Source of the DNA: Haliotis rubra
Taxonomy: Eukaryota
Direction: 5' to 3'
DNA length: 64,000 bases
Assembly: GCF_003918875.1 (NCBI RefSeq)
Contig: NW_025765333.1
Location: forward strand, 62,001 to 126,000
A program made the translations under genes and the position numbers. The number at the start of each line of letters is the position of its first letter. Position 1 is the stretch's first letter. Positions 9,467 through 63,900 of the stretch are shown here, piece after piece. The notes under the pieces were generated by a model. That model did not search any database and was not told the DNA's origin. It saw nothing but the letters and a program-made list of their open reading frames with translations.

Positions 9467-9620
9467 AAGGGAGGTGGGATAGTCTAGTGGTTACAACGTT
9501 TGCTCATCACACTGAGGACCCGTGTTCGATTCCCCACATGGGTACAATGTGTGAAGCCTATTTCTGGTGTCCCCGACCGTGATACTGATGGAAAATTGCT
9601 AAAAGGGGTGTAAAACCTAC
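9467..9620 (+). mobile_element. tRNA-derived SINE (short family; partial copy also at ~9285-9387)
   Basis: A/B boxes (TAGTCTAGTGG, GTTCGATTCC) and the shared core CCCCACATGGGTACAATGTGTGAAGCC. Confidence 0.8.
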
Positions 9621-23724: not shown

Positions 23725-23889
23725 GGGCGGTGGGGTAGCCTAATGGTTAAAGCGTTGGCTCGTCACGCCGAAGACCCGGGTTCGAATCCCCACATGGGCA
23801 CAATGTGTGAAGCCCATTTCTGGTGTCCCCCGCCGTGATGTTGCTGGAATATTGCTAAAAGCGGCGTAAAACCAAACTCAGTCAGTCAG
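23725..23889 (+). mobile_element. Full-length young tRNA-derived SINE
   Basis: Intact A/B boxes. 14-bp TSD TCTTGTACAACAAG (23711-23724, 23890-23903). Empty site at ~10944. Confidence 0.92.
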
Positions 23890-43525: not shown

Positions 43526-45707
43526 TTAACATGCATCTATTAATAACACCCGATTTGAGTGCATAGCAAGAAGAAGGGAACACAAAATATATGTGTAGGT
43601 GTGTAAGCAGCTTGAACCTGATGATATGTCGGTATGGCGATCTGTATGGGAGTCATCTCCTGAATCCGTCACTCGCTTGGTCAAACTGTTAGTCACACAG
43701 AGACCATTATCATCACATGTGTGGCAGCCACTGGGACATCGGAGTTGGCAATTCTCTCCTCTCCATCCTTCTGAACAATATCTGCATCTCCCATACTCGT
43801 CACATTCATCATCTTTACAGTTAGTACATTTCCTGTGGCAATGCTTTCCATGGTAACCCGTTACACAGTCGTGGGTACACGAACCATCTTGACTGGCACA
43901 CAGTGATTCCTTGCACGTTTTACTGCATGGCGTCAGACAGTGTTTGCCATGCCAACCAGACTTACAGCCATCTAAACAGGCACCATCATGACTGTAACAA
44001 CGAGACGAGTTGCAGGAGGTGCTGCACCGAGTGGCACAACGATGACCGTGCCATCCTACTTCACAACCCTCCAGACAGTTACCGGTATAACGATCACAGT
44101 GCCTGTGCCCATCCCTGCCTCTGTAGCACGTTTCAGGACAGTTGTGGTTGCACTGTCTTCCACGATAACCTGGACTACACTGTTCACATGTACCAGTTCC
44201 TCTGTCACAGCCAGTGGTATAACATTGAGGGCACGTTTTGTCACACATGTCTCCATAGAAACCCGACTTGCAGCCATGGAGACAATATCCGGTTGAGCTG
44301 CATCTAATACTAAGGCACGTATCACACGTTCTGTTGCAGTACTCTCCTGTCCAAGTTTCCTGACAGCCAAAGATACATCGACCGGTTTCTTTGTTACAGA
44401 CTTGATCCTTGCAGTGTACACCAGCCAATCCTCCGTCACAGGTTTCCGAACAAGCACCAGTATGGCGGTCACAGATATTCGTGACCGTTGTGATGCTCGA
44501 ACATCTTCTCGGACAGGCGACATTACAGTCTCGTCCATAATATCCTGGCTTGCATGTAAAACATTCCCCAGTGATTCTGTTACACCCGCCTGTGTGACAG
44601 TCATTACATGGGATGGTGCAGTTTGCTCCATAGCAACCAACGTCGCATGACTGACATCGTAGTCTACCGTTTCCATGTCGACATCCATCAGATAAGCATG
44701 AGACTGATCTAGCCAAACCTGCAATACCAAAATGTGAAGAAAGATATATATTTGCACGTATATATCTGAAGTTATAATGTTTTGAACAAAGTGAAGCTTT
44801 TATCGTCTAGTTACATTGATAGTCATCGACTTTGATATGAACATAGCTTATTGCCGTCGTCTTTGGAAGTAAAGCTACGCCCGAGACTTTGTATTGAAGT
44901 GTGAGTTGGCTCCTGTTCTTCATGTGAAAAACCGATTTCCATTTTGTCCCAATGTACGAACATTTTCCTAACATTCGAAAATAGCTGGATCCAATGATGC
45001 TATGTTTACACCTCGGGCATAGCAAACGTTCAATTGCTTTCAACGGCATTGCTTCATTGTATACTGTTAAAAAAGCAGAGACTATTCCATCCATAGGTGT
45101 TATTATTTAGGAACCAAGCTGTATGATTGTATGTGATTTAGAAAATGAATTTAGTGCAAAAACGTGTTTCATGGTGTGCACGCTAACATGGTTGGCGTAA
45201 ATCTACAACTTACTTTGGAACATGTCATTTTGTTGCTGTACATGTCAGTCATAAAAATCAAATTGAAAGTTGTTCTGACATTGTTTAAGTTCAATTTAAC
45301 GTTGTTTGTGAGGCGGCGTCTGTCACGTAAGGAACTGCTAGGGCAGCTGATGTGGTCGGAAATTGGAACAAGCATTTGGCAAGAGCTCTTACCGTTTCAT
45401 AGTCAGTAGTTTTCAGCTTAAAATCACAAAATCGATCTGGTCCAATCTTGGAAATGTAGATTCTGTCTTGGTTAATGATCAAGTCTGACAAGATACTTGT
45501 GATCCATGCATACCTATAGTAGGTCCTATACTATTGTTTGAGAAGGTTCGTACATGAGCAAACAAGGCTGGTTCAAGTATATGATATTACTGATCCACGA
45601 ACTGTAAGTGACACTAACACGAGTGGAATAGAGGATTTTAAATACATACCAACACAACGGCTAAGGTAAAGAAGTAGGAGGATGAGGAGTCTTTCCACTG
45701 ACATCAT
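43526..45707 (-). CDS. EGF-repeat (MEGF/SCARF-like) secreted or GPI-anchored protein, copy 4, intact, ~416 aa
   Basis: Exon 1 45707-45650 encodes MMSVERLLILLLLYLSRCV followed by G|GTATGT. Exon 2 44718-43526 follows TTGCAG and contains the 396-aa Cys-rich ORF. Hydrophobic C-terminus YTYILCSLLLAM. Confidence 0.88.
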
Positions 45708-46205
45708 TGACTGTTGTTTCCTGTCTTGTGTCTTGATTGATGACCGTCAGCCACTGGGTATACACTGTCCACGGGTTTTACAACTTCCCGGCCGACGTAG
45801 TAGTGAGCCATTCGAACGTCAAATAAACAACACACAGTATTTATATTTATGTGCAGAGTTCTGCATTGATGTAGACACACTGCTAGATTGTTCATTCGGT
45901 ATTTTGAAAATGTGCAGGTGACACAGGGTGAAACGGTACTTAGTAGATCATGGAACATGACTCCGTGAGCGACAAACGAGTACACATTGTCAAATTCACG
46001 TGTTTGCAAACAGCGCCACAACAGTCCTGGTCGTCTACGGTGAAGCATGTAAACTGGAGAATTGGGTTCTTAGTTCAACCACCAATGTTTAAACGTGTGA
46101 CGCATGTCGATCCTCCGCTTTTGTGTTTCTAGAAGTGTCGGCACCGTACACATGTTGTACAACTAGGTGTATTCTATTCATTTGAATAACTCACTGAAGT
46201 TTGTT

Positions 46206-49200
46206 GATAATGCTTCTAATGTTGATTGGCTACCGATATATTGTACAGCCCTGCTATCAAGTTATCCGAGTATGGAAGACCCGTCTGTGTATGTGTCAAC
46301 AAGTCACTGAGTAAAGCTTGTAAGTTGATAAAAACAGACATTGATAATTTTGTGTGTCTCAGTTTCACAACAGATATTTTCCTCACTCAAATATAAATTT
46401 ACTATGTACAAACATACCACCAGCGGGTTCGTCAAAATGTAACCTTGATCAAGTTGATAACTTTTTATTATTGTAATCTGGCGCAATTAAGTGATTCGCA
46501 TACATTGTTATATGGTGACATGAACGCTCGAACAGGTGTGAGCAATAACCCACAGGTTCCTGTCAATGATGATAGAAATATCAGCATTGGTGTTTTTGAA
46601 GATGATGATGATATCACAGTTGATAATCTAAAGTCACATGATACTCTCATTAATAAGTTCGGACAAAACCTGATAGACCTTTGTTATGCGTTTCAGCTAT
46701 TCATCGTTAATGGCTGAGTGTTCGGAGACGAACGAGGTGAATTTACTTTCATGTGACAACAAGGCAATAGTGTTCTAAAAATGCCACTCAAACAAGTTAA
46801 GGCATGGTGTTAATGACTATTTCATCTCTTCTCCTGACGTTTTTCAATATATCAGCAAGCTGAATAGAGGTGATCAATTAGAATCTGATCATTTGGCACT
46901 GGAACTAACCTGTAAATTTCCTTCCTTGAAAACGTCGAATCTTAATACATCGTTGGAAGGTTTACTTCATAAAATCATATGGAATGATGCTCTTTGTGAC
47001 AATATTTTGGAAAATCTAAAAACGAATTATGCTCGTGGAATTCAGACATTTTTAGATAAACTTGATGACGCAATTGATGATTTTAAATGCATGATTGTAG
47101 AGTCTGCTAGTTGCATGAAGAAACGTATAATGAAACATAGAAAACATCGTAGTGATTTAAACAGGAGACTCTACTGTAAGGAAAGAAATAGATACAAAAC
47201 CCTTTGTAGAAGATACAAATCAGACTTGCGTAAACGAAATGTTAATTAGAAAGACTTTGCAAATGAAATGGTTCACCACCAGCGTTTTGGAAACAAATAC
47301 GAAAATTCAAGAATAGACCAATCATTGGCAATAGAATTACTAAAACAGCATGGCTTGCTCATTTTAATTTTTTTTTTTAGAAATGATTCTGTCTTTAATG
47401 ATTCTTGCACAAGCACTGATATGCAAGATGATGCAATAAGTGTGACATTTGAAAATGATTCAGACCAAGAAGCACTTGTATTAGATTCAATCATTACAGA
47501 TCAGGAAATTTGTGAAGCGTTGGTGCACTTAAAAAACGGAACATCAGCTGGTTTGGACCAAGTTGTTGTAGAAATGTTGAAGTGTTCACAATCTGTCATT
47601 ATGCCGTTTAATAAGTTGTTCGAGACTGGTATATTTCCACGCAGTTGGGCAATGTCACTTATCATCCCTATGCATAAAAAGGGGGATTGTACAAACCCTG
47701 ATAATTACAGAGGTATTTCCCTCATGAGTACTCTTGGCAAATTTTTTAATACGGTTCTAAATAATCGACTATCAAAATGGGCAAATATGAAAGGTGTTAT
47801 TCCTAAATCGCAAGCAGGTTTTAGGAAAAAATACTCAACGCCAGATCATATATTTACACTACTGGCCCTAGTAGAAAATTGTTTATCTCGCCGTAAGCGG
47901 AAGTTATATGTTGCCTTTGTCGATTTTCGCAAAGCTTTCGATTCTGTTGATCGTTCAAAACTTTGGTACTGTTTACGTAATTCTGGCCTTACAGGGAGAA
48001 TGTACTTAGTTCTGAAAGCAATGTATGATAATGTGAAAGCATGCGTACGCTGCGGTGATGATTTAACTGAATTATTTGACTGCCCGATCGGCCTGAGACA
48101 AGGTTGTGTTCTCAGCCCCATCCTCTTTTCCTATAGTATTTTATCAATGAATTATACTACGAAATTATGGCAAACGGATAACATGGCGTCCAAATGTTTC
48201 CAGATCTAATAGAAATCTTAATACTATTATTTGCCGATGATCTTATTCTTCTATCAGAATCAGTTCTTGTTGACACAATTAAATATTTTAGAACGTTACA
48301 CAAAGACATGGAACCTATCCGTGAACCTTGATAAAACACATATAGTCATTTTCAGAAAAGGTGTCCCACTTGCGGTAAGAGAAAGATGGAGTTTCGATAA
48401 TCAACTTGTAACTGTAAGAAATCAGTATACATATCTTGGTTTTATGTTTAATACAATCATTAATTTGAAGAAAAAAAACCGGTTGCTGAACTAGCCCTGA
48501 GAGCAAAGAAAGCATCAATTAGTTTATTGTCAATTATGCCTAATTAAGCGTGTTGACGCCAAAAATATTTATTAAGTTATTTGATTCACAAATACAGCCT
48601 ATCTTACTCTACTCTATATGGGGATTCCAGCGTTTTGAAAGTATCGAAAATATACATCTATTAGCGTGTAAAACGTTTCTTTGTGTTGGTCAGTCAACAC
48701 CAACATGTATGGTATATGGCGAATGTGGGAGATATCCTTTGTATATCAATTCCTATATCGATACATAAAATACTGGCTGAAAATTATATGTATGCATGAA
48801 AATAGACTACCTAAAAAGGCTTACAATATGCTTGTTCATCTGCATGAGTTGGGTAAAGTAACATGGGCATCTCATGTAAGAAATCTCCTATTTTCTCATG
48901 GTTATGGTTTTGTGTGGCTAAATCAGTCATCTGGCAATGTGAATGTTTTTTGTACTAATTCCGAGAAACAGCTATCAATATATTTAATCAAGATTGGCAT
49001 TCAGTTTTAGATAATAGCTCACGATATGATCCCTATAGCATGTTTAAAACCCTTAACCAACGCGAAAAGTACCTATCACACTTAACATCCAAAAAGTTGA
49101 GAAATTCATTAATACGATTAAGATTAGGACTATCAAACTTAATGATTAATGAAGGAAGGCGTGTATCCATCGACAGATATACAAGAATTTGCTCATTGTG

Positions 49201-49505
49201 TAAATTATCCATTGAAAACGAAATTCATTGTTTTATTTGTCTGTCCATCTTAATAGATTTACGTAAATAATATATTCCTGAATGTTACCTCTCCAAGTCA
49301 CCTACTGGAGCATTTAAACAAATCCTGTCTACTTATGACACCTGTATTAACTTAAAACTATCACAATACAGCTACAATGCAATGTCCAAGCGTGATATCT
49401 GTCAAAATCATCTCTGTATTCAAATAGTCTGTGATTGTATAATGCATGCAACTCTAATGCATATGGGCCGGAGGCCTGAAATACAATAAACATCTTTGAC
49501 TTTTT
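46206..49505 (+). mobile_element. Degenerate LINE (APE + RT), RTE-X-like
   Basis: GDMNART (APE); NYRGISL, QAGFRK, FVDFRKAFDSV, GLRQGCVLSP, LFADD (RT); QPILLY, GECGRYP, C-terminal Cys/His finger; AATAAA near the 3' end. Flanks rejoin the sequence seen uninterrupted at ~21135-21150. Confidence 0.9.
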
Positions 49506-50604
49506 TGCACTCTACCAAATGGTGGCGAACTATCAGGGTTATTACACAAAACAAACGGGCATTGCCGGCCACGATCACCGGAAGCACATTGACTGTACAC
49601 AGTCGCATTCTATAAGTGGCAGATATCCATGACCATTGGTTCAACACATTCGCCCTATGCTCTTTCAAAATTTCAAAAATTAAGCCAAAAACAACAAAAT
49701 GACAAGGATTTTCATACCACCTAAGGTAAACATCGCCTTCATTATGAAAATGACCCAAGGGTTAATATGATAAAGACAGATTTTAGTCCAAAGAATTTGT
49801 TATCACCTACGGGTCCAAAACAAGCTTTGAGCTAATAGAAAATCCTGCACATTGCAGTATATTGTCAGTATATTATATTTCTACCGACCAAACCAAATCA
49901 CCTATCACACTGCACGTCTCAGTCACTATCATGGTTAAAAACATATCTGGTAGCATGTAACAACAATAAACATATTACATATACTGACTAAGTAAGGATG
50001 ACTAAGTAAGGTTTACTGAAAGATACCAGATAAACTATATAACAGAAAGGGTCAACGCCAGAGAATATTTTTTCGATTATCTTCCAAAAGGGATGCCTTC
50101 TGCCACAAAAGGGGAAAATGTGTGAATACCAAATGAATGGATCACTGGAAATAAGTAACTGTAACACTACAGTATATAGCGTCCTGTACAGCGTGCTGTA
50201 CGTAAAATGAACTTACAATTTATGCAAATCTTCCTCAGGTGACAAACTTACAATTTATGCAAATCTTCCTCAGGTGACAGTATTATATTATCATATGTTA
50301 TGAATCATGTATAGGAGCTAAATGTATTGCATAATCCGTCACGTCAAACAACGGTGTTCACTTTAACAATACAGCCTTCCCTGGTAAAAACGCCTAAATT
50401 TGTATAGGGAAGTTTGGGCATTTTTTACTCGGGTGGCGTGATAACCGGAGAGGACGCTCCACTCAGTCATATATGAATATATATACATTATTTGTTTCAT
50501 GTGGAGATCGTTGTCTATTTGTAACAGAAACAAACATGACATCCATGCTATTCGTGTAGTAATTTACAGCACGCTGTCAAACTGTCACTTCATTGTGGCT
50601 TAAA

Positions 50605-50832
50605 GAGTGAGTGAGTGAGTTTAGTTTTACGCCACACTCAGCAATATTCCAGCTATATGGTGGCGGTCTGTACACAATCCAGTGATCAACAGCATGAGCA
50701 TCGATCTGCGCAATTGAGAACCGGTGACATGTGTCAACCAAGTCAGCGAGCCTGACCACCCGATCCCGTTAGTCGCCTTTTACGACAAGCGTGGGTTACT
50801 GAAGGTACATTCTAACCCGGACCTTCACGGGT
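50605..50832 (-). mobile_element. V-domain-type SINE
   Basis: Reverse complement of the 11252-11521 family. Confidence 0.75.
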
Positions 50833-50986
50833 AGTGGCTTACAGAGGTTTGTTTGAATAGTATTAGAAAATGTTATAACAATTGCTTTATAGAGGGCAAT
50901 GTGTTTTTCAGTCATTTTGAGCCGGGCCCGTCAATTTTAAGAGGCAATAAATTTCCTACATCCGTTTGTGTTAGATCCGCCAAAGC

Positions 50987-51021
<35 letters not shown>

Positions 51022-51066
51022 CAATTATATAATATTCTATTTTATTCACAAACATATCACTATATC

Positions 51067-51944
51067 TACACTCTTCAAAAATAAGTTTTGAGAATATTGG
51101 ACTCATGTACCTGCCGCAAAGACAAAACAAATAATATACTATTTCCTTCCAAAACGCCTTGAAAAGAGGAAATCATCATGCCGCGACTGAGTGGCACCAA
51201 TCGAAACATCGCCATTGGCCGCCTTGAAGTTGGTGAGTCGCAGTCTATAGTTGCCCGACGTTTCTACGTTCATCAGAGCTTCATATCTCGCATTTGTGAA
51301 CGTTTCCTACAGACCAATTCCGCCCAAGATCACCCGATAACGATTTCGTCTTCACCAGCGAGACGGAAGACAGCGTGTTTACCGTCGGAGAAATTAAAGT
51401 TTTGTCCCTAATTGCATTCTACAGGTCGTCAAATTCGGTGGGGACAGTGTCATGATGTGGGGTGTGATATCCAGCACACAAAGATATGATTTAGTAGTAG
51501 TTCAGGGGAATTTGACAACAAATCGGTACATCAACGAAGTCCTTGCACTTCACATCCTTCTGATTATGGGTCGTCAGAAGGACCGTCAGAGGCTACTTCA
51601 CGTACAACACGCGTTACGGTCCGCTATCTTGCCAATTCCAGCGTCAGTGTCTTACCACGGCCTTCCTGATCACCAGACCTAAACCCGATAGAACACCTAT
51701 TGGATGATCTCAACCGACGTGTACATCAACGTCAAAACACGCCTGAGACTCTTCCACAATTTACTGGCCATCGCATTGCAGGAAGAGAGGGGAAGAACTA
51801 CGCAAGAGCGACTTCGTCAGCTTATGCAGTCCGTGCCAAGACGGTGCCGAGCAGTAATTGCTGCAAATGGTAAATAATGTCCCTTAAACTAACGCAATGA
51901 ATTCTTCTAAAAATGACATATGCGTTTCTATTTATGAGAGTGTA
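51067..51944 (+). mobile_element. Old, internally deleted Tc1-family element
   Basis: MPRLSGTNRNIAIG, VMMWG and PDLNPIEHL remnants. TIR-like ends TACACTCT..AAATA / TATTTATGAGAGTGTA. Confidence 0.85.
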
Positions 51945-51949
51945 TATAT

Positions 51950-52097
51950 NNNNNNNNNNNNNNNNNNNNNNNNNNNNNNNNNNNNNNNNNNNNNNNNNNN
52001 NNNNNNNNNNNNNNNNNNNNNNNNNNNNNNNNNNNNNNNNNNNNNNNNNNNNNNNNNNNNNNNNNNNNNNNNNNNNNNNNNNNNNNNNNNNNNNNNN
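51950..52097. other. Assembly gap
   Basis: Run of N. Confidence 1.
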
Positions 52098-52467
52098 TGC
52101 GACGAATATGTATAATATATATCCTTCCTGAAGCAGTTTGACAGTTAAAATAATCCTCAACAACCTTCTCCTTGCCAAAGAGAGGGGGTAATCAAATCGT
52201 CATCAGCACAATATATTTATTATATTGTTGATTTGGTATCTCCTTTCTATACTTTGTTATTTAATGTTTATTTCTTCCAACATACTAAAACTATATTGTA
52301 ACCTAATGAAATATCAACAAAATGTTCAGCCAGGTGGGAGCGCATCGTAATCAAACAAGAGTTTACAGCAAACAAAGCATCCATCGCGTATCCACCGATT
52401 AGGTTCCTTTAAATGTTACGAACGATAATTCAACCATTACGCTGCTAACAGCTGTATTTCCTGAAAA

Positions 52468-52635
52468 GGGGCGGTGGGGTAGCCTAGTGATTAAAGGGTT
52501 CGCTCGTCACGCCGAAGACCCGGGTACGATTTCCCACATGGGTACAATGTGTGAAGCCCATTTCAGGTGTCCCCCGCTGTGATATTGCTGGAATATTGCT
52601 AAAGCGGCGTAAACCTAAACTCACTCACTGCTCAC
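52468..52635 (+). mobile_element. Full-length tRNA-derived SINE
   Basis: Same family as 23725-23889; TSD TAT(T/A)TCCTGAAAA. Confidence 0.85.
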
Positions 52636-54074
52636 TATATCCTGAAAAATGCACGTATATTATTACACATCGTATTAGAAAACTGAAAATGTGAGAAGCG
52701 CCGATAAAATATAGATTTGTATTATGTTTCCTTTCAGAGAAAACTGCACGTGTGTTGAAGCAACGTTATTTTTGCACGTTCATCACAAGCTAAGGGTTTC
52801 CCTGTAAGTGCTTATTTTAAGGACAGCTAGGAATTGGTGAGAAAAATTGGAAATATATGACGCGAAGCTAAAATTAGAACTCCACAACAAAAGGACATTT
52901 TGTGTATAAGTACTGCCACGTCAAATGTCTATTGTATCAAAACGAAATTACCCATCTATTAATATCTACACATATACAAACCACGACCCTTAATAAGTAA
53001 CACGTCAGACAGGGACAAACAGCACAATAAAACAGTTGATTTAAAACAACACAGGATGCCAGTGTCAACACTGAGATATGCTGTATAGGTATGTATATGG
53101 TGTTGTAATAATAATAATACATGTAATTGATTTATAGAGCATTCTGGTACAGTGATGTAGACTGTGATAGATTGTTCTGATTATTAATAAGTTTTTCTTT
53201 GCTTTTGGTTGGATATTTTGAAAATGTGATTGGGACCCGACTTGAATCTGTAATGAGCGCATGTTGTTTTATTCCTCGATCGAGTCACAAGCAAACTGTA
53301 TCCTTTTGGCATTCAGTACACCTGGTTGTCGATTACATTATCAGTCTCGATTTAAGATGTTTGTTCACCATTCAGTTCCACGTTTACTACACTTGTGTGA
53401 TTACACAATATAATATATGCATAGGCACATGTATGTGCTTATACATACATATACATATATATATATACATCAACATACACATATATTTACTTACACGCTC
53501 ACACACACTCACCCACACTTACACGTATACACATATAAACAAGATACATTGTATATAGTTTGCTGCTAACCATATAAGTGTATGTTTGATACTTGTTTTG
53601 TAACTGATATCGATACAGATTAAGATTGTGCATTGGATAAGTGAGTGAATGTTGGTTTTCAGCATCATTTCAGCCATCTTGCCATAATGGAATAAACGAA
53701 TCCGGACCATAACTCCGTGAGTTAGGGTTCGTCCTCGTAACGTGTTGTAAACAGGGGCACGGCGCTGCCGTAGAAGGCATTGCCATTAGCCGTGCAGAGT
53801 TGTGTTCTTTGGCCACGCTGTAAGAATGGGACGGAGACCAGACAGTCACTTTGACCAAGCATAGTAACATGTGAAATAGCTATATCAAACGGGTTAAATT
53901 TGCCTCATTGTCCCATGTTGAAAGACGATCAGATTCAAAGTTCTATTTCGACAATACTTTTACGTTTCTAGTTTTGACGTTTATCATACGTCAGGAATAC
54001 TATTTCTCCAATTTTGTCAGAAAATATGTTTGAAGAATCTAAGTTTTCTAGATCTTTTCCTTGTTTCAGAGACG

Positions 54075-56665
54075 ATGATACAGGTGCACGTATTTACAGT
54101 ACTGCTGTGCGTGAGCGCAGCTTTCGGCGCAGCCTTCAACCCTGACTACTTCCGGTGTCACCTTGACCTCTGTAAACGAGGAGAACAGTACTGTGTGGAG
54201 GAGAGACAACGATGTTACCACTGCGCAGACTTAACTCACCTGTGCAATACAACTGAACTCTCGCGAGACTGTGACAGCTATTGCTATCGTAAGTACACAC
54301 ATACAGTAACTCATAACGGATAAATTCCATTCGTAGAATGTAAGCAATTGTCCGTATGAATTACAAGAAACGATCGTTTGTTTGGCTGATATTAGAATGT
54401 GATTTAATCGACAAATCAGTTGTGGTCTTGAAAGGAAATATGTAGTTCTTAAAAGTTAAGATGGTTTCGCTTGTTGTTTAACGCCGCACTCAGCAATATT
54501 CCATCTATATGGTGGCGGTCTGTAAATAATCGAGTCTGGACCAGACAATCCAGTGATCAACAGCATGAGCATCGATCTACGCAATTTGAATACGATGACA
54601 CATGTCAACCAAGCCAGTTAGCCTGACTACACGATCCCGTTAGTCGCCTTTTACGACAAGCATGGGTTACTGAAGACCAATTCAAACCCGGATCTTCACG
54701 GGTTTATAACTTAAAAAAGCAGTGGTCAAGAGGCCTGTCCCTTGAACATAACTGTCAGCGCTGTACATGTGACTTCAAGTTTCATTAATTTCGGGGATAA
54801 ACGTCAACGACGTGTGTCACCTTCGTTTCTCCAATATATGGATATCAAATTAGGATTAATATAATTCGTAACCACACAGATACAATGTATATGACCATGT
54901 GCATCAATCCTGGGTTATTCACCATCTTTAAAATATAACGATAAAATCGTCTTTGTTATACAACAATGTGATCTCTTTTCAGGGGTTCAATTACAGAACG
55001 TAGTGGAACTTGAAGCAAATAAAAGCGCGGAGTTGGCAGACAGGCAGGCACACCTCCAACAGGAACAACAGAAAAACGCTGATCTGAAACAGACAGTCAA
55101 ACAGCTGGAGAGTAACGTCAGCCGACTCACAACAGTAAACGAGAATCTGAACGCTGAAATAACCAAAGGTGAAAACCTGAAAACAGAACATAAAGGTGAG
55201 ATAGCTGAGTGCTAAATATTGTAACTGTAGGTAATACAATCATTGTTCGTGTGTTCGTGTTATACATCTAGTCACAACAGTCATTGTGGTTCATCATTGT
55301 GTTTCAAAAAAGATAAAACGTGAATATCAAGTCTCGATTATTCAATGAAACAGGTGGCATCAGGTGTTATCTTTAATAACGTATAAACGAATCACATTAT
55401 GAAAACATTGTTGATGAGAGGTTCAAATCAGAATAACCACTCAGGTTGAAAAAGCTAATTTGAACACTTGGGATTCAAATTCAGTTTAATCAACTCTTAA
55501 TTCAGCATTGCAAATATAGTATAACACATAAAAGCACATATTTGTACGATTTCATTAAACATCTCTGATATCTGTTTGTTACAGAGCTGGTGAAACAATT
55601 GAACCAGAGCAAGATCAACTTCATCGTATGTCTAGTGAGTGGAGTGTTCATTGTCATCATTCTGTCAGGGACCATTTGTTGTCTCTATTGTCGGAAAGAA
55701 CGCCATTCAAACTCTATCGGCATAACGCAGTCAGGTAGGAAGAAGTACTCGCTGTATTGAAACCTTGTGAGACCATTTCGAAAGGTTCCATAAATATGAA
55801 ATTAGATTAAATTGTTTGAAGAATTTAATATAAAATATCACGGAAATAATATTTTAAATACCAATCTATTATTGCTCAGAAAATAAAGAGTGATTTCTTG
55901 TCTGATAATGTTACTGAAACATCTTTGCAAAAAATATGTGTAATCGCTTTTTGTTCAGTTACATTTTTGTTGAGATAAAATGTGGTCAATGAATTCGCAT
56001 TACTTTGAACATTACTGCAAACTAAATGCATATTTTTCAAAACGCTTAATGCTTTCGGAAGATATCAGTGGAATTGCCATTAAGGAGACAAAACAAGTTC
56101 TGGTCTGTTCGGAATCAGAATTTTGTGTCTAAACGTTGTATCCTCGTGTAGCTGTTGGTTTGGATAGGACTCATCACAAGTACTCAAAGACACAAAGGCG
56201 TGAATGCACATCGCAATATAGGTGCGGTAATCTGGACGCTGAATCTAATTTTCCCTCCCATACACTTGAGCTTTACATGTCCTTATATTTACAGGGGAGA
56301 TTAAAGGAGAGAACCGTTCCGATCTCGTCCCTTTGATGGACAAATGTGCACACCTTCCCACAGTTTCTCCTGGCCTTACCATCAATGGTGACGTCACTGT
56401 AGAAAGATTGGAGGTTCAGTCACCTGACAAAAACATCGACGATATCAACAGCACTCCTCCGCCAGCATACCAATCGCGTCTTGAAGCGAAGAAGGATAGC
56501 ATAGACATAACCGTGGCAGACAAAAACGACATTAACAAAAGAGAAAATGAGAGAACACCCTCAGTTCTGAAAAATATTCAACCCACTGACAGTTATTCAG
56601 GTAAGAAATACCCCGTTGAGCTGCTGAATCAAATTCAGAATGTCGACAACACCTATCCTCAGTAA
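54075..56665 (+). CDS. Grindelwald/TNFR-like single-CRD type-I membrane receptor A, ~315 aa
   Basis: Exons 54075-54288, 54983-55195, 55585-55734, 56295-56665: all GT-AG, all phase 1, total 948 nt. Signal peptide MIQVHVFTVLLCVSAAFG; 8-Cys domain; coiled coil; TM FIVCLVSGVFIVIILSGTICCLYC; tail with PPPAY. Confidence 0.85.
54470..54703 (-). mobile_element. V-domain-type SINE in intron of receptor A
   Basis: Same family as 11252-11521. Confidence 0.75.
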
Positions 56666-56901
56666 AGGACGTTTGTCTTCTGTATCAAAGGACAAGTGAT
56701 TGTTGGAACTGTGAATTTGTGAAAACTATCATTAGGGAGACAGTATATAAGATCATGCCTACTTTCATATAAACTGACAATGTTCGATGGTTATTCCAGC
56801 AAGAATATGAGTGAGTGGGGTTGAACAGTATGTCAACTATATCGTGGCAGAGTAATGTGTATTAAAAGCCAAAAGTTATGTTGTACTTGGACGTTTACAA
56901 C

Positions 56902-57022
56902 CAGGGGCTCCTTTCACGAAGCATCCTTTACAAAGGTTAACCTTAACTCCCATTCTTTAACATTGCACTAAGGTTACCTTAGCGACTACGATCACCTTAG
57001 TGCTTTGTGAAAGGGGGCCCTG
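56902..57022. mobile_element. Palindromic MITE (Harbinger-like)
   Basis: CAGGGGCTCCTTTCACGAAGCA...TGCTTTGTGAAAGGGGGCCCTG. Confidence 0.7.
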
Positions 57023-59697
57023 GGGCATGTGGCCGACCATTGTGACCCTTTGAGTGTGTAGTCATGAGGACCAACTTACAGTATTCAGTAAGTTTATGAT
57101 ATTTTACATTTTGGTCACAACAGGTGATCCAAATCGCAGGCATGACCAATTTGGTGGAACCAACTGCCACTGATGGCCTGGGTGATGCTAGGATTCGAAC
57201 ATACGGCATAAGTTTCAGGCTATAAGATTAAAGCATCTCTACACAGGATTTGCTGCATTGTAGATGACAACAACAACGGTACCTCGGAGTCGAAAACCTA
57301 GTTACATGTTGTACCTATGTTGGTAAGCGAGTCCTGACTTTTGTGTACAAACCGAATCATCCGTTGTTATACCATGACAGGTTTTTGTGAAGATTTCATG
57401 TACTTTTGTATACGTATTTAACTGAGAATGAATGCTTATATTTACAACATTATGTACAAACGTTACAATAATTTTAATTGTAAGTATGTTTTTGTAGCCA
57501 AGTGGTAATTTATGTTTGATCCCAAATGTTATTCAGTGATTAGATGTTGTCATACATATCATGATTGCTTTAATTGTATGAGTGAGTGAGTGCCGCAGTC
57601 AGCAATATTCCATCTACATGGCGGCGGTCTGTAAATAATCGATTCTGGACAAAACAATCAAGTGGTCAACAGCATGAGTGTAATTGTATGAATGTGATCT
57701 CATTGATGTAGAACTTTGCATTATAGCTTTTAACGCGAATGTGTGCATATACGTGCATATATTGCTGTAATACCACTGACCAGACACTTGAACGCTTGAC
57801 CAATCACAGACCTGCATTAGGTTGTGTTGCACAATGGCGCACGTTCATACAGTAATATGTCCATATCATTCCCTGAACTGTAGCTATTGTTGCTTTCTGT
57901 TTCACCCGGTTGCTTAACATAAATACCTAATGACCGTTGTCGACATGATTTTCTTAAAAACTCCCAGGCTCACTGATAGAGAGTATTCACATTGTTGTTC
58001 ACTCACTAAAAGGATAATCCCTGTCTCCTTCTACAAAAATAAAGGTAATCATAGAGCAGTATTTTCCAAAGCAAGTGGAAATAGGGATAGTCTGTAAAGA
58101 TAGTTGGAATATCCTTTTTGTTTCCAGAGATGCTTTTCACTCAAGATGTGTTTTCCATTTTGATATATTTAAGGTCTTCCAGCCGTGTGGTATCAAGCGA
58201 TGATTACTTCCTCGTGGCCATTATCTTATTCTGTTCAGTTTGTACATTCCGAGATCTGAACAACTCTATGTGTGTGCCCATGTCTATGTCAAGTTCATTA
58301 CATACTGAATGGTTGTGATAAGTCCATGTGTATTTTTATTGATTATGTTATTGTTAATTTCCCTCGGCTTTCAGTTACATTTTCGATGGTTACAAATAAC
58401 TTATTTTTGAATTTGATTAAATATGAAAAGATATAACTACACCCTTTCACTACCGTCTATTTATTTGTTACTTCTGTGAGTAATCCCGGTTGGGTTCAAG
58501 GATGTGAGTCAAGGAACATCAGGCATCTGTGAAGAAAAAAAAGGACGATGATTCTCACGGCAAGGCATTTGTCTGAACGATCTGAATCACAGCTGCTTTA
58601 TTGAATAGTAGTATAGAGGCACTAGTCCTCGTTTGAAAGTGTTTTCTCGAAAGCGGCATTGGAATACGGTTATTATGTCTTCGTTATATGTACAACATGA
58701 AGAATATAAAGAAAAATATGATTTTTAGTATCACACTAGTTCCGTTATAGGATAGGGCAAACCTGGATGTTTCTACACGGCCCCAGCTGGGACTCAAACA
58801 TAGATACTACAGGGTTTACGTGTAGCAATGACGTCGTGCATACAGTTAAACAGTTGAAAAAATAATATCAAAATACGTAAGTGAATGAGTGAGTGTTGTT
58901 TTACGCCGCGTTTAGCAATATAACAGCAATATTAGAAATGGGTTTCACACATTGTACCCACACGGGGAATCGAACCAAGTCTGCTAATCATCTCGTGTGG
59001 ACCCGATCATGCAGTGACTGACATAAGCATCCATCATCCACTTGGGTTATCATGACATCCATCAAAGAAAGTCACCCAGCCTGAACAACCAGCCCCATTA
59101 ACCACCTCTTAAGACCAGCAGGGAATACCGATTCCAACCTGGATATTCACGGGAACCATGAGTGCAAATGAAAACGAACAAAGAAAAAAACATAGTTATC
59201 CAGAAAACACCACTAAAGCCATCTTTTTTAACTAAAGCCCATCGTTCTGCATGAAGGAAACGCTTTGTGAACAGCAGATGCATTAATTCCATGTACAGTC
59301 TTACCTATACAATGAGTAAGTAGAGCGAACGAAGTTTTTACACGACAACATTTCAGTTATATGATGGCTTGTCAGCGAGGTTAATCTGAGAGGAAATCTG
59401 AGGAAGGCCATTGTTCACCAGGAGCACTACCTTGGTGTAGACAAACCCTGATTACAAGTGCTTTGTGAGATTCGAACATACGATCATCAGGAAAAAATAT
59501 GCATTGCAATTATGGGTGTTTAGTCTCTTTAGTTTTAGAAACTTTTACTGATGCCATCAGGGACATTACTTTGTAGTTGTTCATACGTAGGCCACAGGAG
59601 CTGACATACAACTTGCGAAGAGGTCTGGCCTTACACTCAAAGATATGGATGTTTGAAGACAGGAGGAACGTGTTGTGAAATGAGGTTTAACGTCAAA

Positions 59698-59856
59698 TGA
59701 GTGAGTGAGTTTTACGCTGTTATTAGCAATATTCCGCTAAGAGCACGACGGTGGATACCAAAAATGAACTTCACACATTGTACCCATGTGGGGAATCGAA
59801 CCCGTGTTGTCGGCGTGGCGAGCGAACACATTAAGCACTAGGCTACCCCCATCGTC
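59698..59856 (-). mobile_element. tRNA-derived SINE (diverged; partial copy ~58880-58980)
   Basis: Reverse-complement core CACACATTGTACCCATGTGGGGAATCGAACCC. Confidence 0.75.
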
Positions 59857-61084
59857 TCACGACACGTACAAGGCACTGTATTCAAGAAATGTCTCCAGAT
59901 AAATCAATGATTTTCCACGTCATGATTGATTATGAACACTGTGGATATGTTAAGAGAAGGGTAATACCCTCCTCACTCACTCTTTATATCGGCGTTGCAC
60001 ACTAACCCTTAAATACAAAAGCATAGTAAAACAGCTGAAATTGCCATTTCTATGCGAAACAGATCCCCATTTTATCACAATACTAGATTCCTATCTCTCT
60101 ATGGTTAGCTTTGGGAAAAGTAATTGTCCTTTTGCGTCAGGTGAAGTCTCGGCCGATGTCTTGTTGTTATGGATGGGTGTCTTCCACCACTAATGGCGTC
60201 TTAACGTCAACAACAACATCAACAACAAAATAGTTTTTACTTTCTTAAAAAAGCATTTAAAGGTGGATATGATGAACAAGGTTGATAATTGTATTCATAT
60301 GTTGCATTAGTTTTCAAATATAAAACAAGTGAGGACGATATTATCAAAGTAATGATGTTTAATACATATCTCTTCATTATAGAAATAGTATTACTTTGCA
60401 CATGACGTAAAGGCCAGGACTGACGCAAGCTATACAGTCGCTGTTTATATATATCAATAAATATTCATAGTGGAGGATTCGTCAAGGCTAAAAATAGTTT
60501 GGAAAACCACCGCCGTCATGAGATGAGTTGTGGTTAAATTTATCCCGGGACATCTTTACAGACAGTGTATTAGATAAATCGATTGTTTATAAGTTCTCGC
60601 TGTCAGACATGTATCATAGTATAACCCTTATACATTAATATAATACATGTGTTAAAGCTGAAGACAAAATACACCAGTTCCATCATAACTTTCAACCACT
60701 GAATCATTGATCGTATGCATGCTCATGAGCTGGCCGAGCTTCTAAATTTAGTCTGATGTCATACACGGTAACAGATGTAAACACAGGATAAAATATACAG
60801 TACGTCAGGTGCTTGGTCAGTTTGAAATCCTTGCTGGAGGTAGTCAGCTGACTTCTTGGTAGGTTATATCAACTGTATGCAATAAGTTTTGTGAGAACTG
60901 CTATGTGTGTTCATTGATAGATATGCAGGGGAGATTGTGTGGCAATTCCATCCTGGAAGAAGTGGTACCCTTTCGCACACGATTGTTTCTTAATATTTTT
61001 TGTGTGTAATGGTTGTACATTGAATATCTTCATTTTAAATGCAACCCTGTTTTACTTGAATACCGAGAGGAAAAGTGGGATCTA

Positions 61085-61330
61085 ATTCGGTGCGAACACT
61101 ATTCTAGCCATTTCATATGCTGAATGGGAAAACATGTCTGACCAACGAAGTGACGTTGTGTCGTTGTCGACAACGTTTGAACAACGTCGTCACAACGATG
61201 CACGTTTGCAGCATTCTTATAGAACAACGTTTTGTATACGTTATATGATCGTGACAACCCTTTAGTGACATTGTGACATGTTTTCGAGACGTGTATATGG
61301 AGTGTGATATTGTTGTGAAAACGTCAACTT
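61085..61330 (+). repeat. CAACGTTG-rich repeat, direct copy at ~62425-62660
   Basis: GCTGAAT.GGAAAACATG...GATCGTGACAACCCTTTA.TGACATTGTGACATGTT present twice. Confidence 0.75.
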
Positions 61331-61651
61331 TTGATCTTCATTTATAATGCATTTAAATAGAATCAGCTTAAGATGAAATCATTCCTGACAGAAGTGGAGT
61401 GGTAAATAATAGCTAATTCTAGAATCGTTAATCGAAATCGGGCATTTGGAGTTTGCATTTTAAATAATAATTTTTCTGAATGATATGACCATTTGCATTG
61501 CATGGGATAATTTGTTATTGTGATACTTCATGCACACTATTCCATCACAGCTGGAACTGCAATATATAGACGTTTTACACAGACTAGCCAACATTGTTAC
61601 CTGTCGATTTGAGGTATTCCATCACGATTATATTGATCTGTTGTAGAGACA

Positions 61652-63900
61652 ATGTTGACTAAGGACACTGTTCTTTGGGTCATCATTGCTCTACACGTGG
61701 GTGTTGCTGTCGACACCAACTACTTCAAGTGTTACCGGGACTTGTGTCGTCGTGGAGAACAGTACTGTGTGGAGGAGAGACAACGATGTTACCACTGCGC
61801 TGACGTAGCTCACCTGTGCAACACAACTGAACTCTCGCGAGAGTGCGACAGCTATTGCAAACGTAGGTAAAAACTGAGTTAGTTTAATTCTTTTTGTAGG
61901 TGTGATTTGAAAATTTCAGGTGCTTTCAAAATGTTTGGGATTAAATGATAAAATATGTTTATTTTCTGGGTACTGGACAAATATCAACTAAATAGGTGGT
62001 ATCTGAGCATTTGCAAAAATATAATAAATGCAAAACTCTAAATCATTTGACATATGTAAATAAATAATTCTTATAATTTTAAGGAAAATTCGTTTGTTTC
62101 AAAAGGGATTGCACTGGAAGAAATGACAAAGGAGAAAGACAAGGCGTTTTCAGAGGTGAAAACAAAACTTCACAGTGAGCAACAAACATCAGCAAAAATG
62201 AAGATGAAGATCACAAAGTTGAACACGAAGCTGGACCAACTGAATGAATCAAGGAGAGCTCCAGTGGTTTTTGACAGGGGAAATACAAAACGCAAAGCTG
62301 ATCATGAAGGTAAAGTACCTTTTTGCACGCGATTGTATGTTTTAATATTTTTGTATTTCAGTATTTGTTAGACATTGAATATCTTAATGTTAATTGTAAT
62401 TCTGCTTGACTTGAATAGCGATGGGAAAATTCGGTGTTAACACTGTTTCAGCTATTTTATATGCTGAATTGGAAAACATGCCAGACCAACGTTGTAGCAA
62501 CATTGTGTCGTTGTCCACAACGTCTGAACAACGACGTCATAATGATTCACGTTTGCAGCGTTCTTTTTAGGCAACGTTATATGATCGTGACAACCCTTTA
62601 CTGACATTGTGACATGTTTAGAGAAGTTTATATGGAATGAATTATAGTTTTGAGTACGTTATTCAAAAAACTTTCCATGTTTGCCTTGGCGTGACAACAT
62701 TTATGGGACACTATATCATCTAAAAACATTTAATGTTTCCAGCGTATATGTTTTGCTTGTTGTTATGATTGGAATGACATGAACAGAAGACAATGAAATG
62801 TTACAGATGTTGCCAAACAGAATGAGTGGTTGAAGGCCACCCTCACCGGCGTGGGTGCAGCTTGTGGTGTGTTGGGGGTAGTGGTGATTATCCTCACTGG
62901 CGTCATTTGCTGCAAATGTACCCAGAAACAAGATCCTCCTGATGAAGGGAAATCTCCGCTCCCACCTGGTAGGCAGAACAAGCATTGCTGGAATTACACT
63001 CACAGAATCGTCATCGGCAGCAAGATCGAAGATGCAATATATATATAACCATACCTTAGGCTTAGGTGATCAGAGAAATGGCTGAAGTTTCAAAGCTGTT
63101 TTTGTGGATCATTTGAACTAGCGTACGGTAAGAAGTGTCATACTCGGGCCTTCAATAACTTCAGGGCCTCAATATATTTAATGCAAGGTCTATATGAACC
63201 TTGTAGTTGTGTAATTTCATTCGTCACCATCTCGTGTTATTAATGGACAAGCTGAATACCGATTCATGCTTCTCTGGAAGGATTTCACATTGTCGAAATG
63301 ACATCAGTTGGTCAAGAATGAGCTGGTATTGCCTCAGTTTACCGCGATGTATTAGCGCTGGTTAGAAACTTCACGCGTCAAGACGAACGGAAGTATGGTA
63401 AATTAGTTAGAAATAAACATTGCATGTGTTCATCATTGTTAAAGACAATAAATTTTAATGTTTTCATTGACAATGTTCCTATTAGACATCAAACATAACA
63501 TGAATGCAGACTGGTCCTCAAAACAGAACTATAGGTTTGCATGTACGTATAGAAATAGGGTTCAAGAGTGAGACATATGTTTGAAAAGACATGTGCATAG
63601 GGACAAATATCAAAGTATATCAACTCTCATGTGTAATTCCGAATTTCTGTATTCACAGTTCCAGAGAAGGAGAAACTGGTGCCATACCAACTGCTGGATC
63701 AACTTTCTCCCCCGTTGCAAGTTTCAGGAGACTATGTCACCATAGGCACGAAGTCTCATGTTGTCAATTCTGACGGCGTCCACATCTTCAGTGCAGCAAG
63801 ACCGAAGATGCAGTCATCTTGCATCAGCAACATGAACAGCAACAACGGCAATGCACCGCCGGAATATAAGACATATTTGGACAGTGGACATGCTTGTTGA
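61652..63900 (+). CDS. Grindelwald/TNFR-like single-CRD type-I membrane receptor B, ~272 aa
   Basis: Exons 61652-61862, 62106-62309, 62807-62968, 63659-63900: all GT-AG, phase 1, total 819 nt. Signal peptide, the same 8-Cys domain, coiled coil, TM GVGAACGVLGVVVIILTGVICC, tail with PPEY. Confidence 0.8.

What the first reader, a model, noticed from the sequence alone, without database searches (positions are those of the whole stretch)
54180..61858. Ligand-binding domain homogenised, signalling half diverged: paired-receptor signature
Seen: 54180-54284 vs 61754-61858 differ at only 6 of 105 nt and include a 47-nt identical run. In contrast, the signal peptide in the same exon, the stalk, the TM helix, the tail and the introns are barely alignable. 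Inference: this is a gene-conversion tract confined to the CRD, giving two receptors that bind the same ligand but produce different outputs, as in paired immune receptors.
Basis: partly seen in the sequence, partly recalled or inferred. Interest (0 to 1): 0.75.

Follow-up and report, generated by a model that had tools for sequence, protein, structure and literature searches.

The report
Old gene-conversion patch in abalone receptors
Two neighbouring abalone genes for small TNF-receptor-like membrane proteins share a 105-base stretch of their binding domain because one copied it from the other long ago; this is a real but ordinary gene conversion, not an actively homogenised 'paired receptor' system.

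Summary
Observation confirmed. 54180-54284 and 61754-61858 differ at 6 of 105 nt, with the first 47 identical. Nothing else in the two genes aligns as DNA.

The window is Haliotis rubra. The genes are tandem four-exon paralogues, A and B, which NCBI fuses into one 'uncharacterized' model. Each encodes a signal peptide, one 8-Cys domain, a long helical stalk, a TM helix and a divergent tail. The domain's predicted fold matches almost only BCMA, TACI, Grindelwald and Fn14.

A-B silent divergence is 0.16 in the tract and saturated elsewhere. Orthologues show normal silent divergence in the tract, so constraint cannot explain it. The tract has a younger common ancestor, which means interlocus gene conversion. 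Contigs from independent runs break exactly at the repeat's edges, so it is not an assembly artefact.

The event is old. Five of the six A/B differences are shared with H. asinina orthologues, and three also with H. cracherodii. The tract groups by orthologue between rubra and asinina. In asinina and cracherodii the copies already differ at 18 and 16 of 105 nt. H. rubra simply changed least. No conserved ITIM/ITAM-type dichotomy exists.

Gene conversion is supported. Ongoing homogenisation and a 'paired receptor' reading are not.

The parts
54075..54288 (+). Gene A, first coding exon: signal peptide plus 8-Cys CRD. The exon probably begins at 54070, after an AG acceptor. The donor is C|GTAAGT, phase 1.
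   Evidence: Sequence and splice sites. Matches NCBI model P0012 residues 1-71.
54180..54284 (+). Conversion tract, copy in gene A. It covers 35 codons: the second beta-hairpin and the helix-loop-helix of the CRD.
   Evidence: 99/105 identical to 61754-61858. dS 0.16. Fold model.
54983..55195 (+). Gene A exon 2: helical (coiled-coil-like) extracellular stalk.
   Evidence: Weak coiled-coil Pfam hits. Continuous helix in the AF2 model.
55585..55734 (+). Gene A exon 3: end of the stalk, TM helix and juxtamembrane Cys-rich stretch.
56295..56665 (+). Gene A exon 4: cytoplasmic tail up to the stop. An internal GT at about 56600 is used by NCBI's fused model.
61652..61862 (+). Gene B, first coding exon: signal peptide plus CRD. 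The exon begins at 61647, after an AG acceptor. The donor is C|GTAGGT, phase 1.
   Evidence: The joint 61862>62106 (GT..AG) is present in run X8.
61754..61858 (+). Conversion tract, copy in gene B.
   Evidence: Independent contigs end at 61783 and start at 61771, as expected for k=31 at the edges of the shared 47-mer.
62106..62309 (+). Gene B exon 2: helical stalk.
62807..62968 (+). Gene B exon 3: TM helix and juxtamembrane part.
63659..63900 (+). Gene B exon 4: cytoplasmic tail up to the stop.

Best explanation
The window is Haliotis rubra. A and B are old tandem paralogues, 7.6 kb apart on the same strand, each with four coding exons and all introns in phase 1. They belong to a small abalone/vetigastropod family of type-I membrane proteins. 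Each protein has a signal peptide, a single 8-Cys domain with a BCMA/TACI/Grindelwald/Fn14-like fold, a roughly 75-residue helical stalk, a TM helix and a cytoplasmic tail. Before the sampled Haliotis lineages split, or around that time, a short non-reciprocal exchange (interlocus gene conversion of about 87-105 nt) overwrote the core of the CRD exon in one paralogue with the other's sequence. This core is the second hairpin plus the helix-loop-helix. Since then the two copies have evolved independently. Silent sites have drifted at the normal rate and replacement sites have been held by strong purifying selection (pN 0.01-0.08 in the tract against 0.13-0.22 elsewhere). The stalk, TM and tail evolve fast. 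The 94% identity seen here is high mainly because the H. rubra lineage changed least. Shown: the mosaic, its significance, the lack of silent-site constraint, its presence in independent data, trans-specific A/B markers, and the predicted fold. Inferred: the conversion mechanism, its direction (unknown), that the tract is the ligand-contacting part (by analogy with the BCMA/TACI hairpin), and any TNF-type ligand.
For: Identity of the window: locus L003 (H. rubra GCA_003918875.1) is 100% identical over 11 kb.

Mosaic: tract dS is 0.16 (3 of 20.8 silent sites). Outside the tract pS is 0.69. The adjacent 48 nt of the same domain have pS 0.60. Identical residues use the same codon in 29/32 cases in the tract and 26/67 outside, p=8.5e-7. 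Using only unambiguous anchors (the 5' CRD and the TM motif), the outside count is 6/16, p=2e-4.

No silent constraint: orthologue pS in the tract is 0.24-0.70, equal to or above the rest of the CDS at 0.19-0.44.

Control: the third paralogue rufC differs from A and B at 23-27 of 105 nt, with silent sites saturated.

Age: the A-type letters at tract positions 48, 90 and 93 are shared by rubA, asiA and craA, and the B-type letters by all B copies. The rubra/asinina quartet sums are 14 (orthologue) against 24 and 24. The A|B branch in the tract is 0.01-0.03 substitutions per site, against about 0.38 in the 5' 48 nt.

Not an artefact: Logan contigs of a second H. rubra sample and of organism C end at 61783, and one of organism B starts at 61771. 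These are exactly k-1 inside the edges of the shared 47-mer. The same mosaic appears in three other species' assemblies.

Fold: the CRD model has pLDDT 88. Only 6 of 48,161 chains reach Z>=2, and the top 5 are BCMA (two entries), TACI, Grindelwald and Fn14.
Against: Silent changes since the rubra/asinina split fall 0 on the rubra copies and 10 on the asinina copies, while introns predict about 36:64 (p about 0.01). This asymmetry is only partly explained by a slower rubra lineage.

Three silent sites (tract positions 31, 66, 99) carry clade-specific letters shared by A and B. About 1.5-2 such parallel hits are expected by chance, so later small conversions are not excluded. The AU test cannot separate the orthologue topology from the clade-wise topology.

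The tract is short, with about 21 silent sites, so all dates are rough. The fold evidence rests on a predicted model with low absolute Z (2.1-4.2).
Confidence: 0.75

Rival explanations
1. Ongoing or recurrent concerted evolution. Repeated recent conversions keep the ligand-binding core of A and B alike, as in vertebrate paired immune receptors. Under this reading the H. rubra identity, especially the 47-nt run, comes from a recent event.
For: Within H. rubra, paralogue dS in the tract (0.16) is lower than rubra-asinina orthologue dS (0.29-0.30). Silent changes split 0:10 between the rubra and asinina branches. Three clade-specific letters are shared by A and B. In organism C both contigs read T at 61822, and the right-hand contig starts at 61765 rather than 61771, so the A/B difference pattern there is not the same as in H. 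rubra.
Against: Five of the six rubra A/B differences are the same in H. asinina orthologues, and three are the same in H. cracherodii. An additive tree with no conversion fits all six rubra/asinina distances exactly. The four asiA-private letters in the first 47 nt are not shared by craA, so they are not lost A-markers. A and B differ at 18 and 16 of 105 nt in the other two species.
Confidence: 0.12
2. No conversion at all. The tract is alike because of constraint on the nucleotide sequence itself, for example an RNA structure, a splicing enhancer, an overlapping reading frame or extreme codon preference.
For: The QYCVEE.(Q/E)RCY.C core is conserved at protein level across the whole family, including distant paralogues and Gigantopelta.
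Against: Silent sites in the tract diverge between orthologues as fast as or faster than the rest of the CDS. The unconverted paralogue rufC has saturated silent sites in the same tract under the same protein constraint.
Confidence: 0.04
3. Assembly or polishing artefact. Reads of one paralogue were used to correct the other, creating a false identical block.
For: The assembly is contig-level, and a second, divergent contig (L004) exists for part of the region.
Against: Contigs of independent runs (a second sample, and organisms B and C) break exactly at the edges of the shared 47-mer. Depth doubles in that bin. The L004 copy has an identical CRD. Assemblies of three other species show the same mosaic.
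Confidence: 0.01

Closest known systems
Siglec-11/Siglec-16, CEACAM1-related and CD300A/C paired receptors (PMC5701461, PMC2832619, PMC5112662, PMC12447643)
   Same: Neighbouring paralogous receptor genes in which gene conversion is confined to the part that encodes the ligand-binding ectodomain, while the membrane and cytoplasmic parts differ.
   Different: In those systems conversion is repeated and recent, so binding domains cluster by species. The partners there carry opposing signalling devices (ITIM against a charged TM residue or ITAM adaptor). Here there is one old patch of about 105 nt covering two thirds of one small domain. Clustering between H. rubra and H. asinina is by orthologue. 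There is no charged TM residue and no conserved ITIM. The fold is not an Ig domain.
Drosophila Grindelwald (PMC8024323; PDB 6ZSY, 6ZT0)
   Same: Type-I membrane protein of about 250-320 aa. It has a single N-terminal domain with 8 cysteines, built of beta-hairpin(s) followed by two helices. It is among the few structural matches (Z 3.2, 43 residues aligned).
   Different: No sequence similarity is detectable by Pfam or a PDB sequence search. The cysteine spacing of the helical module differs: C-x6-C-x8-C-x3-C here against C-x3-C-x11-C-x3-C in Grnd. The abalone proteins have an extra long helical stalk. The ligand is unknown.
BCMA / TACI (TNFRSF17 / TNFRSF13B)
   Same: These are the best structural matches (Z 4.2-3.5, rmsd 1.6-2.3 A over 35-37 residues). 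From established knowledge, they are single-CRD-type receptors that share ligands (BAFF, APRIL) but have different tails.
   Different: There is no sequence relationship. It is not known whether the abalone proteins bind a TNF-family trimer. BCMA and TACI are not kept alike by gene conversion.

Membership tests
Interlocus gene-conversion tract between tandem paralogues | A sharply bounded block whose silent divergence is far below that of both flanks | tested here: met
   Tract pS is 0.14. The adjacent 48 nt have pS 0.60 and the rest of the gene 0.69. The introns are unalignable from 11 nt past the donor.
Interlocus gene-conversion tract between tandem paralogues | The block is not explained by constraint on silent sites | tested here: met
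   Orthologue pS in the tract is 0.24-0.70, equal to or above the rest of the CDS. Paralogue rufC is saturated in the tract.
Interlocus gene-conversion tract between tandem paralogues | The tree of the block conflicts with the tree of the flanks | tested here: met
   The A|B branch is 0.01-0.03 substitutions per site in the tract against about 0.38 in the 5' 48 nt. A and B form no separate supported clades in the tract.
Paired immune receptors | Binding domains kept alike by recurrent conversion, so they cluster by species | tested here: not met
   The rubra/asinina quartet gives an orthologue topology (14 against 24 and 24). Five of six differences are trans-specific. The deeper rubra/cracherodii quartet is ambiguous (22, 24, 29; AU test not decisive).
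Paired immune receptors | Near-identical whole ectodomains | tested here: not met
   Only 35 codons are alike. The first hairpin differs at 8 of 16 residues and the stalk is 27% identical.
Paired immune receptors | Opposing signalling devices (ITIM against a charged TM residue or ITAM adaptor) | tested here: not met
   No charged residue lies in either TM helix. One ITIM-like VPYQLL in rubB is not conserved in asiB, craB or rufB. The tails share PPxY and GD.VT motifs.
Paired immune receptors | Co-expression in the same cells | not testable with these tools
   Only a spliced B exon 1-2 joint was seen, in one RNA-like run.
TNF-receptor superfamily, single-CRD type (BCMA/TACI/Grindelwald/Fn14) | CRD fold: beta-hairpin plus disulfide-braced helix-loop-helix | tested here: met
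   The AF2 model has pLDDT 88. Of 48,161 chains, 6 reach Z>=2 and the top 5 are BCMA (two entries), TACI, Grnd and Fn14. The Foldseek top 12 and 17 of the first 19 rows are the same families, though with E>1. This rests on a predicted model and low absolute Z.
TNF-receptor superfamily, single-CRD type (BCMA/TACI/Grindelwald/Fn14) | Sequence-family membership (Pfam or PDB sequence match) | tested here: not met
   No Pfam family at E<=10 for either CRD exon. No TNFR chain in the PDB sequence search at E<=10.
TNF-receptor superfamily, single-CRD type (BCMA/TACI/Grindelwald/Fn14) | Eight cysteines in Grnd-like X2 + C2 module spacing | tested here: inconclusive
   Eight cysteines are present, and all but one are invariant across the aligned family members (one 82-aa fragment lacks the second). 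The spacing is C-x4-C-x6-C-x6-C-x2-C-x6-C-x8-C-x3-C, which differs from the Grnd C2 consensus quoted in PMC8024323. Disulfide pairing was not examined.
TNF-receptor superfamily, single-CRD type (BCMA/TACI/Grindelwald/Fn14) | Binds a trimeric TNF-family ligand and signals through TRAF-type adaptors | not testable with these tools
   No complex prediction or binding assay was available.

The most novel reading that the evidence does not exclude
The CRD core may be a recurrent recombination module in an abalone-specific family of Grindelwald/BCMA-like receptors that sit on coiled-coil stalks. Short exchanges inside exon 1 would repeatedly place the same ligand-binding head on different stalks and tails. 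Three observations point this way: the A/B patch; paralogue C of H. rufescens, which looks like a B-type leader and first hairpin joined to an A-type body; and the clade-specific letters shared by A and B. On this reading, low-rate concerted evolution still operates and yields receptors with one specificity and several outputs.
Probability: 0.15. Interest if true: 0.55.

Novelty: new member of a known kind. Interest (0 to 1): 0.33.

Why it matters
The work gives a name and an architecture to two abalone genes that public annotation fuses and calls 'uncharacterized'. They are a lineage-restricted pair of single-CRD, TNF-receptor-like proteins on a helical stalk.

It also shows a clean, datable example of a short gene-conversion patch in a mollusc immune-type receptor. 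For abalone immunology, a farmed animal with viral and bacterial disease problems, these are candidate TNF-pathway receptors worth testing.

As evolutionary biology it is a textbook mechanism. It also carries a caution: high paralogue identity in one slow-evolving species can mimic ongoing homogenisation.

Tried and rejected
- Pfam on all eight exon peptides gave nothing for the CRD or the tails, and only weak coiled-coil-like hits for the stalk.
- The PDB sequence search returned one chance hit.
- The word search with the exon-1 peptide was blank, as expected from its length window.
- The profile search of 1.84 billion proteins found 11 hits, of which I took 9 as family members (the two long multi-stretch hits were not examined). 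The nine are eight Haliotis proteins and one from Gigantopelta, one of them unnamed.
- Foldseek E-values were all above 1, so I relied on the specificity of the hit list and on VIA-align.
- Read laying on 56200-62199 was dominated by high-copy repeats. Most differences and joints were not listed. I therefore could not read the six diagnostic letters in organisms B and C, nor test the 56600>61647 read-through junction. Only contig ends, one variant (61822) and one splice joint were usable.
- The topology test on the tract cannot date the conversion relative to the North-Pacific split.
- No non-coding flank of rufC aligns to A or B, so its chimeric origin rests on coding similarity only.
- A recent rubra-specific conversion of the first 47 nt was considered and rejected. 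The asiA-private letters are not shared with craA, so the rubra 47-mer is the inferred ancestral state.
- I did not search for orthologues of paralogue C in other species. One protein search was left unused, because the answer would not change the verdict.
Full report
**1. The observation**

Window 54180-54284 and 61754-61858 align without gaps. They are identical at 99 of 105 positions, and the first 47 are identical. A self-BLAST of the window finds one gene-to-gene alignment only: 54145-54295 vs 61719-61869, at 86.8% over 151 nt. Every other hit near the two genes is a dispersed repeat.

I aligned the two genes codon by codon, exon by exon (714 columns, 405 identical) and shuffled the columns 20,000 times. 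No shuffle reached a 47-nt identical run (maximum 29) or 99/105 identity in a window (maximum 81).

**2. What the genes are**

Locus L003, from Haliotis rubra assembly GCA_003918875.1, is 100% identical to the window over 11 kb. The window is therefore blacklip abalone.

Reading the sequence gives two tandem genes on the + strand. Each has four coding exons, GT-AG introns and phase 1 throughout:

| Gene | Exon 1 | Exon 2 | Exon 3 | Exon 4 |
|---|---|---|---|---|
| A | 54075-54288 | 54983-55195 | 55585-55734 | 56295-56665 |
| B | 61652-61862 | 62106-62309 | 62807-62968 | 63659-63900 |

NCBI's model LOC124268654 (P0012, 568 aa, 'uncharacterized') uses exactly these exons. It fuses the two genes by splicing an internal GT at about 56600 to the acceptor at 61647. 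In H. asinina and H. cracherodii, A and B are annotated as separate genes in the same order, each behind a conserved minus-strand neighbour. Run X8 contains the joint 61862>62106 with GT..AG ends, so B's first intron is spliced in RNA of a close relative.

Each protein has the following parts:
- a signal peptide;
- one 8-Cys domain;
- a roughly 70-residue stalk;
- a TM helix with a Cys-rich juxtamembrane stretch;
- a tail.

**3. Family and fold**

The CRD exons hit no Pfam family and no PDB sequence. A profile of the two CRDs, searched against 1.84 billion proteins, returned 11 hits. I took 9 as family members and did not examine the two long multi-stretch hits. The nine are eight Haliotis proteins and one from Gigantopelta aegis; one Haliotis-like fragment carries no name and the rest are 'uncharacterized'. 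A second search added H. cracherodii and further H. rufescens members.

An AlphaFold2 model of the A CRD, built with 14 homologues, has mean pLDDT 88. It shows two beta-hairpins followed by two helices. In an all-against-all structural search of 48,161 chains, only six reach Z>=2. The first five are BCMA (two entries), TACI, Grindelwald and Fn14 (Z 4.2-2.1). The first twelve Foldseek rows, and 17 of the first 19, come from the same families, although their E-values are not significant.

Grindelwald is described as a hairpin plus two helices with eight cysteines in four disulfides (PMC8024323). That matches in kind, but the cysteine spacing differs.

A model of the ectodomain plus TM shows the last CRD helix running on as one 114-residue helix through the stalk and membrane. 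I therefore file the proteins as TNFR-like by predicted fold, not by sequence. The long helical stalk is an unusual addition.

**4. Is the tract a conversion patch?**

*Silent divergence.* A-B silent divergence in the tract is 3 of 20.8 sites (dS 0.16). In the adjacent 48 nt of the same domain it is 6 of 10. In the signal peptide and exons 2-4 it is saturated (pS 0.64-0.88).

*Codon use at identical residues.*

| Region | Same codon / identical residues |
|---|---|
| Tract | 29 / 32 |
| Outside tract | 26 / 67 (p=8.5e-7) |
| Outside, unambiguous anchors only | 6 / 16 (p=2e-4) |

The anchors are the conserved residues of the first hairpin and the TM motif. In the TM motif, 7 of 8 identical residues use different codons.

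*Constraint on silent sites is excluded.* Between orthologues, silent divergence in the tract is 0.24-0.70. That is equal to or above the rest of the CDS at 0.19-0.44.

*Internal control.* A third paralogue in H. rufescens (rufC, P0004) has the same protein constraint. It differs from A and B at 23-27 of 105 nt, with saturated silent sites.

The tract therefore shares a much younger ancestor than the rest of the genes. For a patch bounded on both sides inside one exon of tandem paralogues, that means interlocus gene conversion. The 5' edge is sharp, at 54179/54180. The A-type AAA CGA and the B-type CGT CGT just upstream of it are fixed in all species. The 3' edge lies between 54266 and 54285.

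**5. Not an artefact**

Logan contigs are built with 31-letter words, so they must break where a sequence becomes shared with another locus. Contigs of a second H. rubra sample (X3) and of organism C (X13) end at 61783, which is 61753+30. A contig of organism B (X4) starts at 61771, which is 61801-30. Depth doubles in that bin.

The second H. rubra contig (L004) has an identical A CRD. The assemblies of H. asinina, H. cracherodii and H. rufescens show the same mosaic.

**6. When did it happen?**

Differences in the 105-nt tract and in the 48 nt upstream of it:

| Species | A-B differences, 105-nt tract | A-B differences, 5' 48 nt |
|---|---|---|
| H. rubra | 6 | 17 |
| H. asinina | 18 | 19 |
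| H. cracherodii | 16 | 16 |

Five of the six rubra differences have the same A-type and B-type letters in H. asinina. Three of them (tract positions 48, 90, 93) also match in H. cracherodii.

For the rubra/asinina quartet, the orthologue sum of distances is 14 and the other two sums are 24 and 24. This is a perfectly additive tree with essentially zero-length rubra branches. In the first 47 nt no species shows a fixed A/B difference. Every change is private to one copy, and the rubra sequence equals the inferred ancestor. So the patch was laid down before the rubra/asinina split. At positions 48, 90 and 93 it has not been overwritten since the split from the North-Pacific species.

For the rubra/cracherodii quartet the signal is mixed (sums 22, 24, 29). 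Three silent sites carry clade-specific letters shared by A and B. About 1.5-2 such coincidences are expected from parallel hits at saturating silent sites, and the AU test cannot separate the two topologies.

Introns show that the rubra branch is about half as long as the asinina branch (0.06 against 0.115). This explains much of the 0:10 split of silent changes in the tract, but not all of it (p about 0.01). I leave that as a small unexplained excess.

**7. The functional reading**

The tract covers the second hairpin and the helix-loop-helix. In the structural alignments these correspond to the BCMA/TACI hairpin and helices (model residues 13-51). By analogy this is the likely ligand-contacting part.

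It is under strong purifying selection in every comparison (pN 0.012-0.08). The rest of the protein evolves fast (pN 0.13-0.22; dN/dS about 0.4-0.7). The core motif is conserved in distant family members too. Protein-level similarity of A and B therefore needs no conversion.

The tails differ in length and in their conserved motifs. The A/C type ends in a conserved ERTPS.LKNIQPTD block. The B type has GDYVTI.TKSH and a C-terminal PPxY..YLDSGHAC. The two types share PPxY and GD.VT elements. Neither TM helix carries a charged residue. The one ITIM-like match in rubB is not conserved.

'Two receptors for one ligand with different outputs' remains a reasonable hypothesis. BCMA and TACI work that way (established knowledge). 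However, the defining features of paired immune receptors were tested here and not met.

**8. Verdict**

Gene conversion confined to the CRD core is supported, but it is an old event followed by independent evolution, not active homogenisation. The paired-receptor reading is not supported.

The mechanism is well known (Siglec-11/16, CEACAM, CD300, KIR). The gene family is new to description. It is lineage-restricted and annotated only as 'uncharacterized'.

**Rule compliance**

All searches with window sequence were exon by exon and by reference. Where full-length proteins were needed I used the public NCBI models returned by the tools.

Noticed in passing
window 56595-56605 and 61645-61651: NCBI's H. 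rubra model LOC124268654 (P0012, 568 aa) fuses genes A and B in frame. It splices an internal GT in A's last exon to the acceptor 5 nt before B's ATG. In the other three species A and B are separate models, and A reads through to its own stop. This is either an annotation artefact or a real read-through isoform. The junction was not among the joints listed by read laying, where 211 were not shown.
   Followed up: partly
L004:1-11999 (H. rubra contig QXJH01002020.1) vs window 44400-56076: A second H. rubra contig is colinear with the window for about 12 kb at 90-96% identity. It then diverges inside A's intron 3. It carries only A exons 1-3, with a frameshift in exon 2 and a degraded exon 3, and no B within 9 kb. 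Its CRD is identical to A's. It is either a divergent haplotype with a structural variant or a partial duplicate pseudogene.
   Followed up: partly
L002:10001-12747 (rufC, P0004) and L002:8019-8129: H. rufescens has the order B1 - C - B2. Paralogue C looks chimeric. Its signal peptide and first hairpin are B-like (dN 0.39 to B, 0.64 to A). Its exons 2-4 are A-like (dN 0.375 to A, 1.03 to B). The switch lies in or near the conversion tract. A degraded CRD remnant lies 2 kb upstream of it.
   Followed up: partly
window 56737-58386: Run X8 (RNA-like, organism B) covers this stretch downstream of A's stop almost continuously at 98-99% identity. It shows no depth on A's last coding exon (56200-56599). 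The stretch could be an untranslated exon of B, an independent transcript or repeat-driven transcription.
   Followed up: no
window 61822 and 61765-61783: In organism C both contigs read T at 61822, where H. rubra B has C and A has T. Its right-hand contig starts at 61765 instead of 61771. The A/B difference pattern in that relative is therefore not the same as in H. rubra.
   Followed up: no
tract, all species; B exons 2-4: The H. rubra copies sit on nearly zero-length branches at silent sites, with 0 against 10 silent changes in the tract. In introns the rubra branch is about half the asinina branch. This excess asymmetry (p about 0.01) is unexplained.
   Followed up: partly
window 54068-54077 and 61645-61654: Both start codons are preceded by the same AG|AGAC(G/A)ATG arrangement. 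Each gene should therefore have at least one untranslated 5' exon upstream. These exons were not located.
   Followed up: no
window 43526-44716 (-) and 14975-15868 (-): These are long ORFs with sub-threshold matches to the teneurin EGF domain. The first belongs to the minus-strand gene (390-414 aa) that is the conserved upstream neighbour of gene A in H. rubra, H. asinina and H. cracherodii.
   Followed up: partly
window 3954-7085 (-), 47268-48209 (+), 1119-1805 / 16895-17885 / 51178-51582: Mobile elements: a Ty3/gypsy-type pol ORF (protease, RT, RNase H, integrase zinc finger), a second RT ORF, and three copies or fragments of a Tc1/mariner-type transposase (HTH plus DDE_3).
   Followed up: partly
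window 56800-57000, 57400-57800, 58800-59000, 59600-60000: These are very high-copy short repeats, with summed contig depth of 10^4 to 10^6 in all runs, including the RNA-like one. They are also found at 9287-9622, 21448-21779, 23310-23884, 52466-52641 and elsewhere in the window.
   Followed up: no
window 60965-61324 and 62315-62659: A 360-nt repeat (75% identity) lies both just upstream of B's first coding exon and inside B's intron 2.
   Followed up: no
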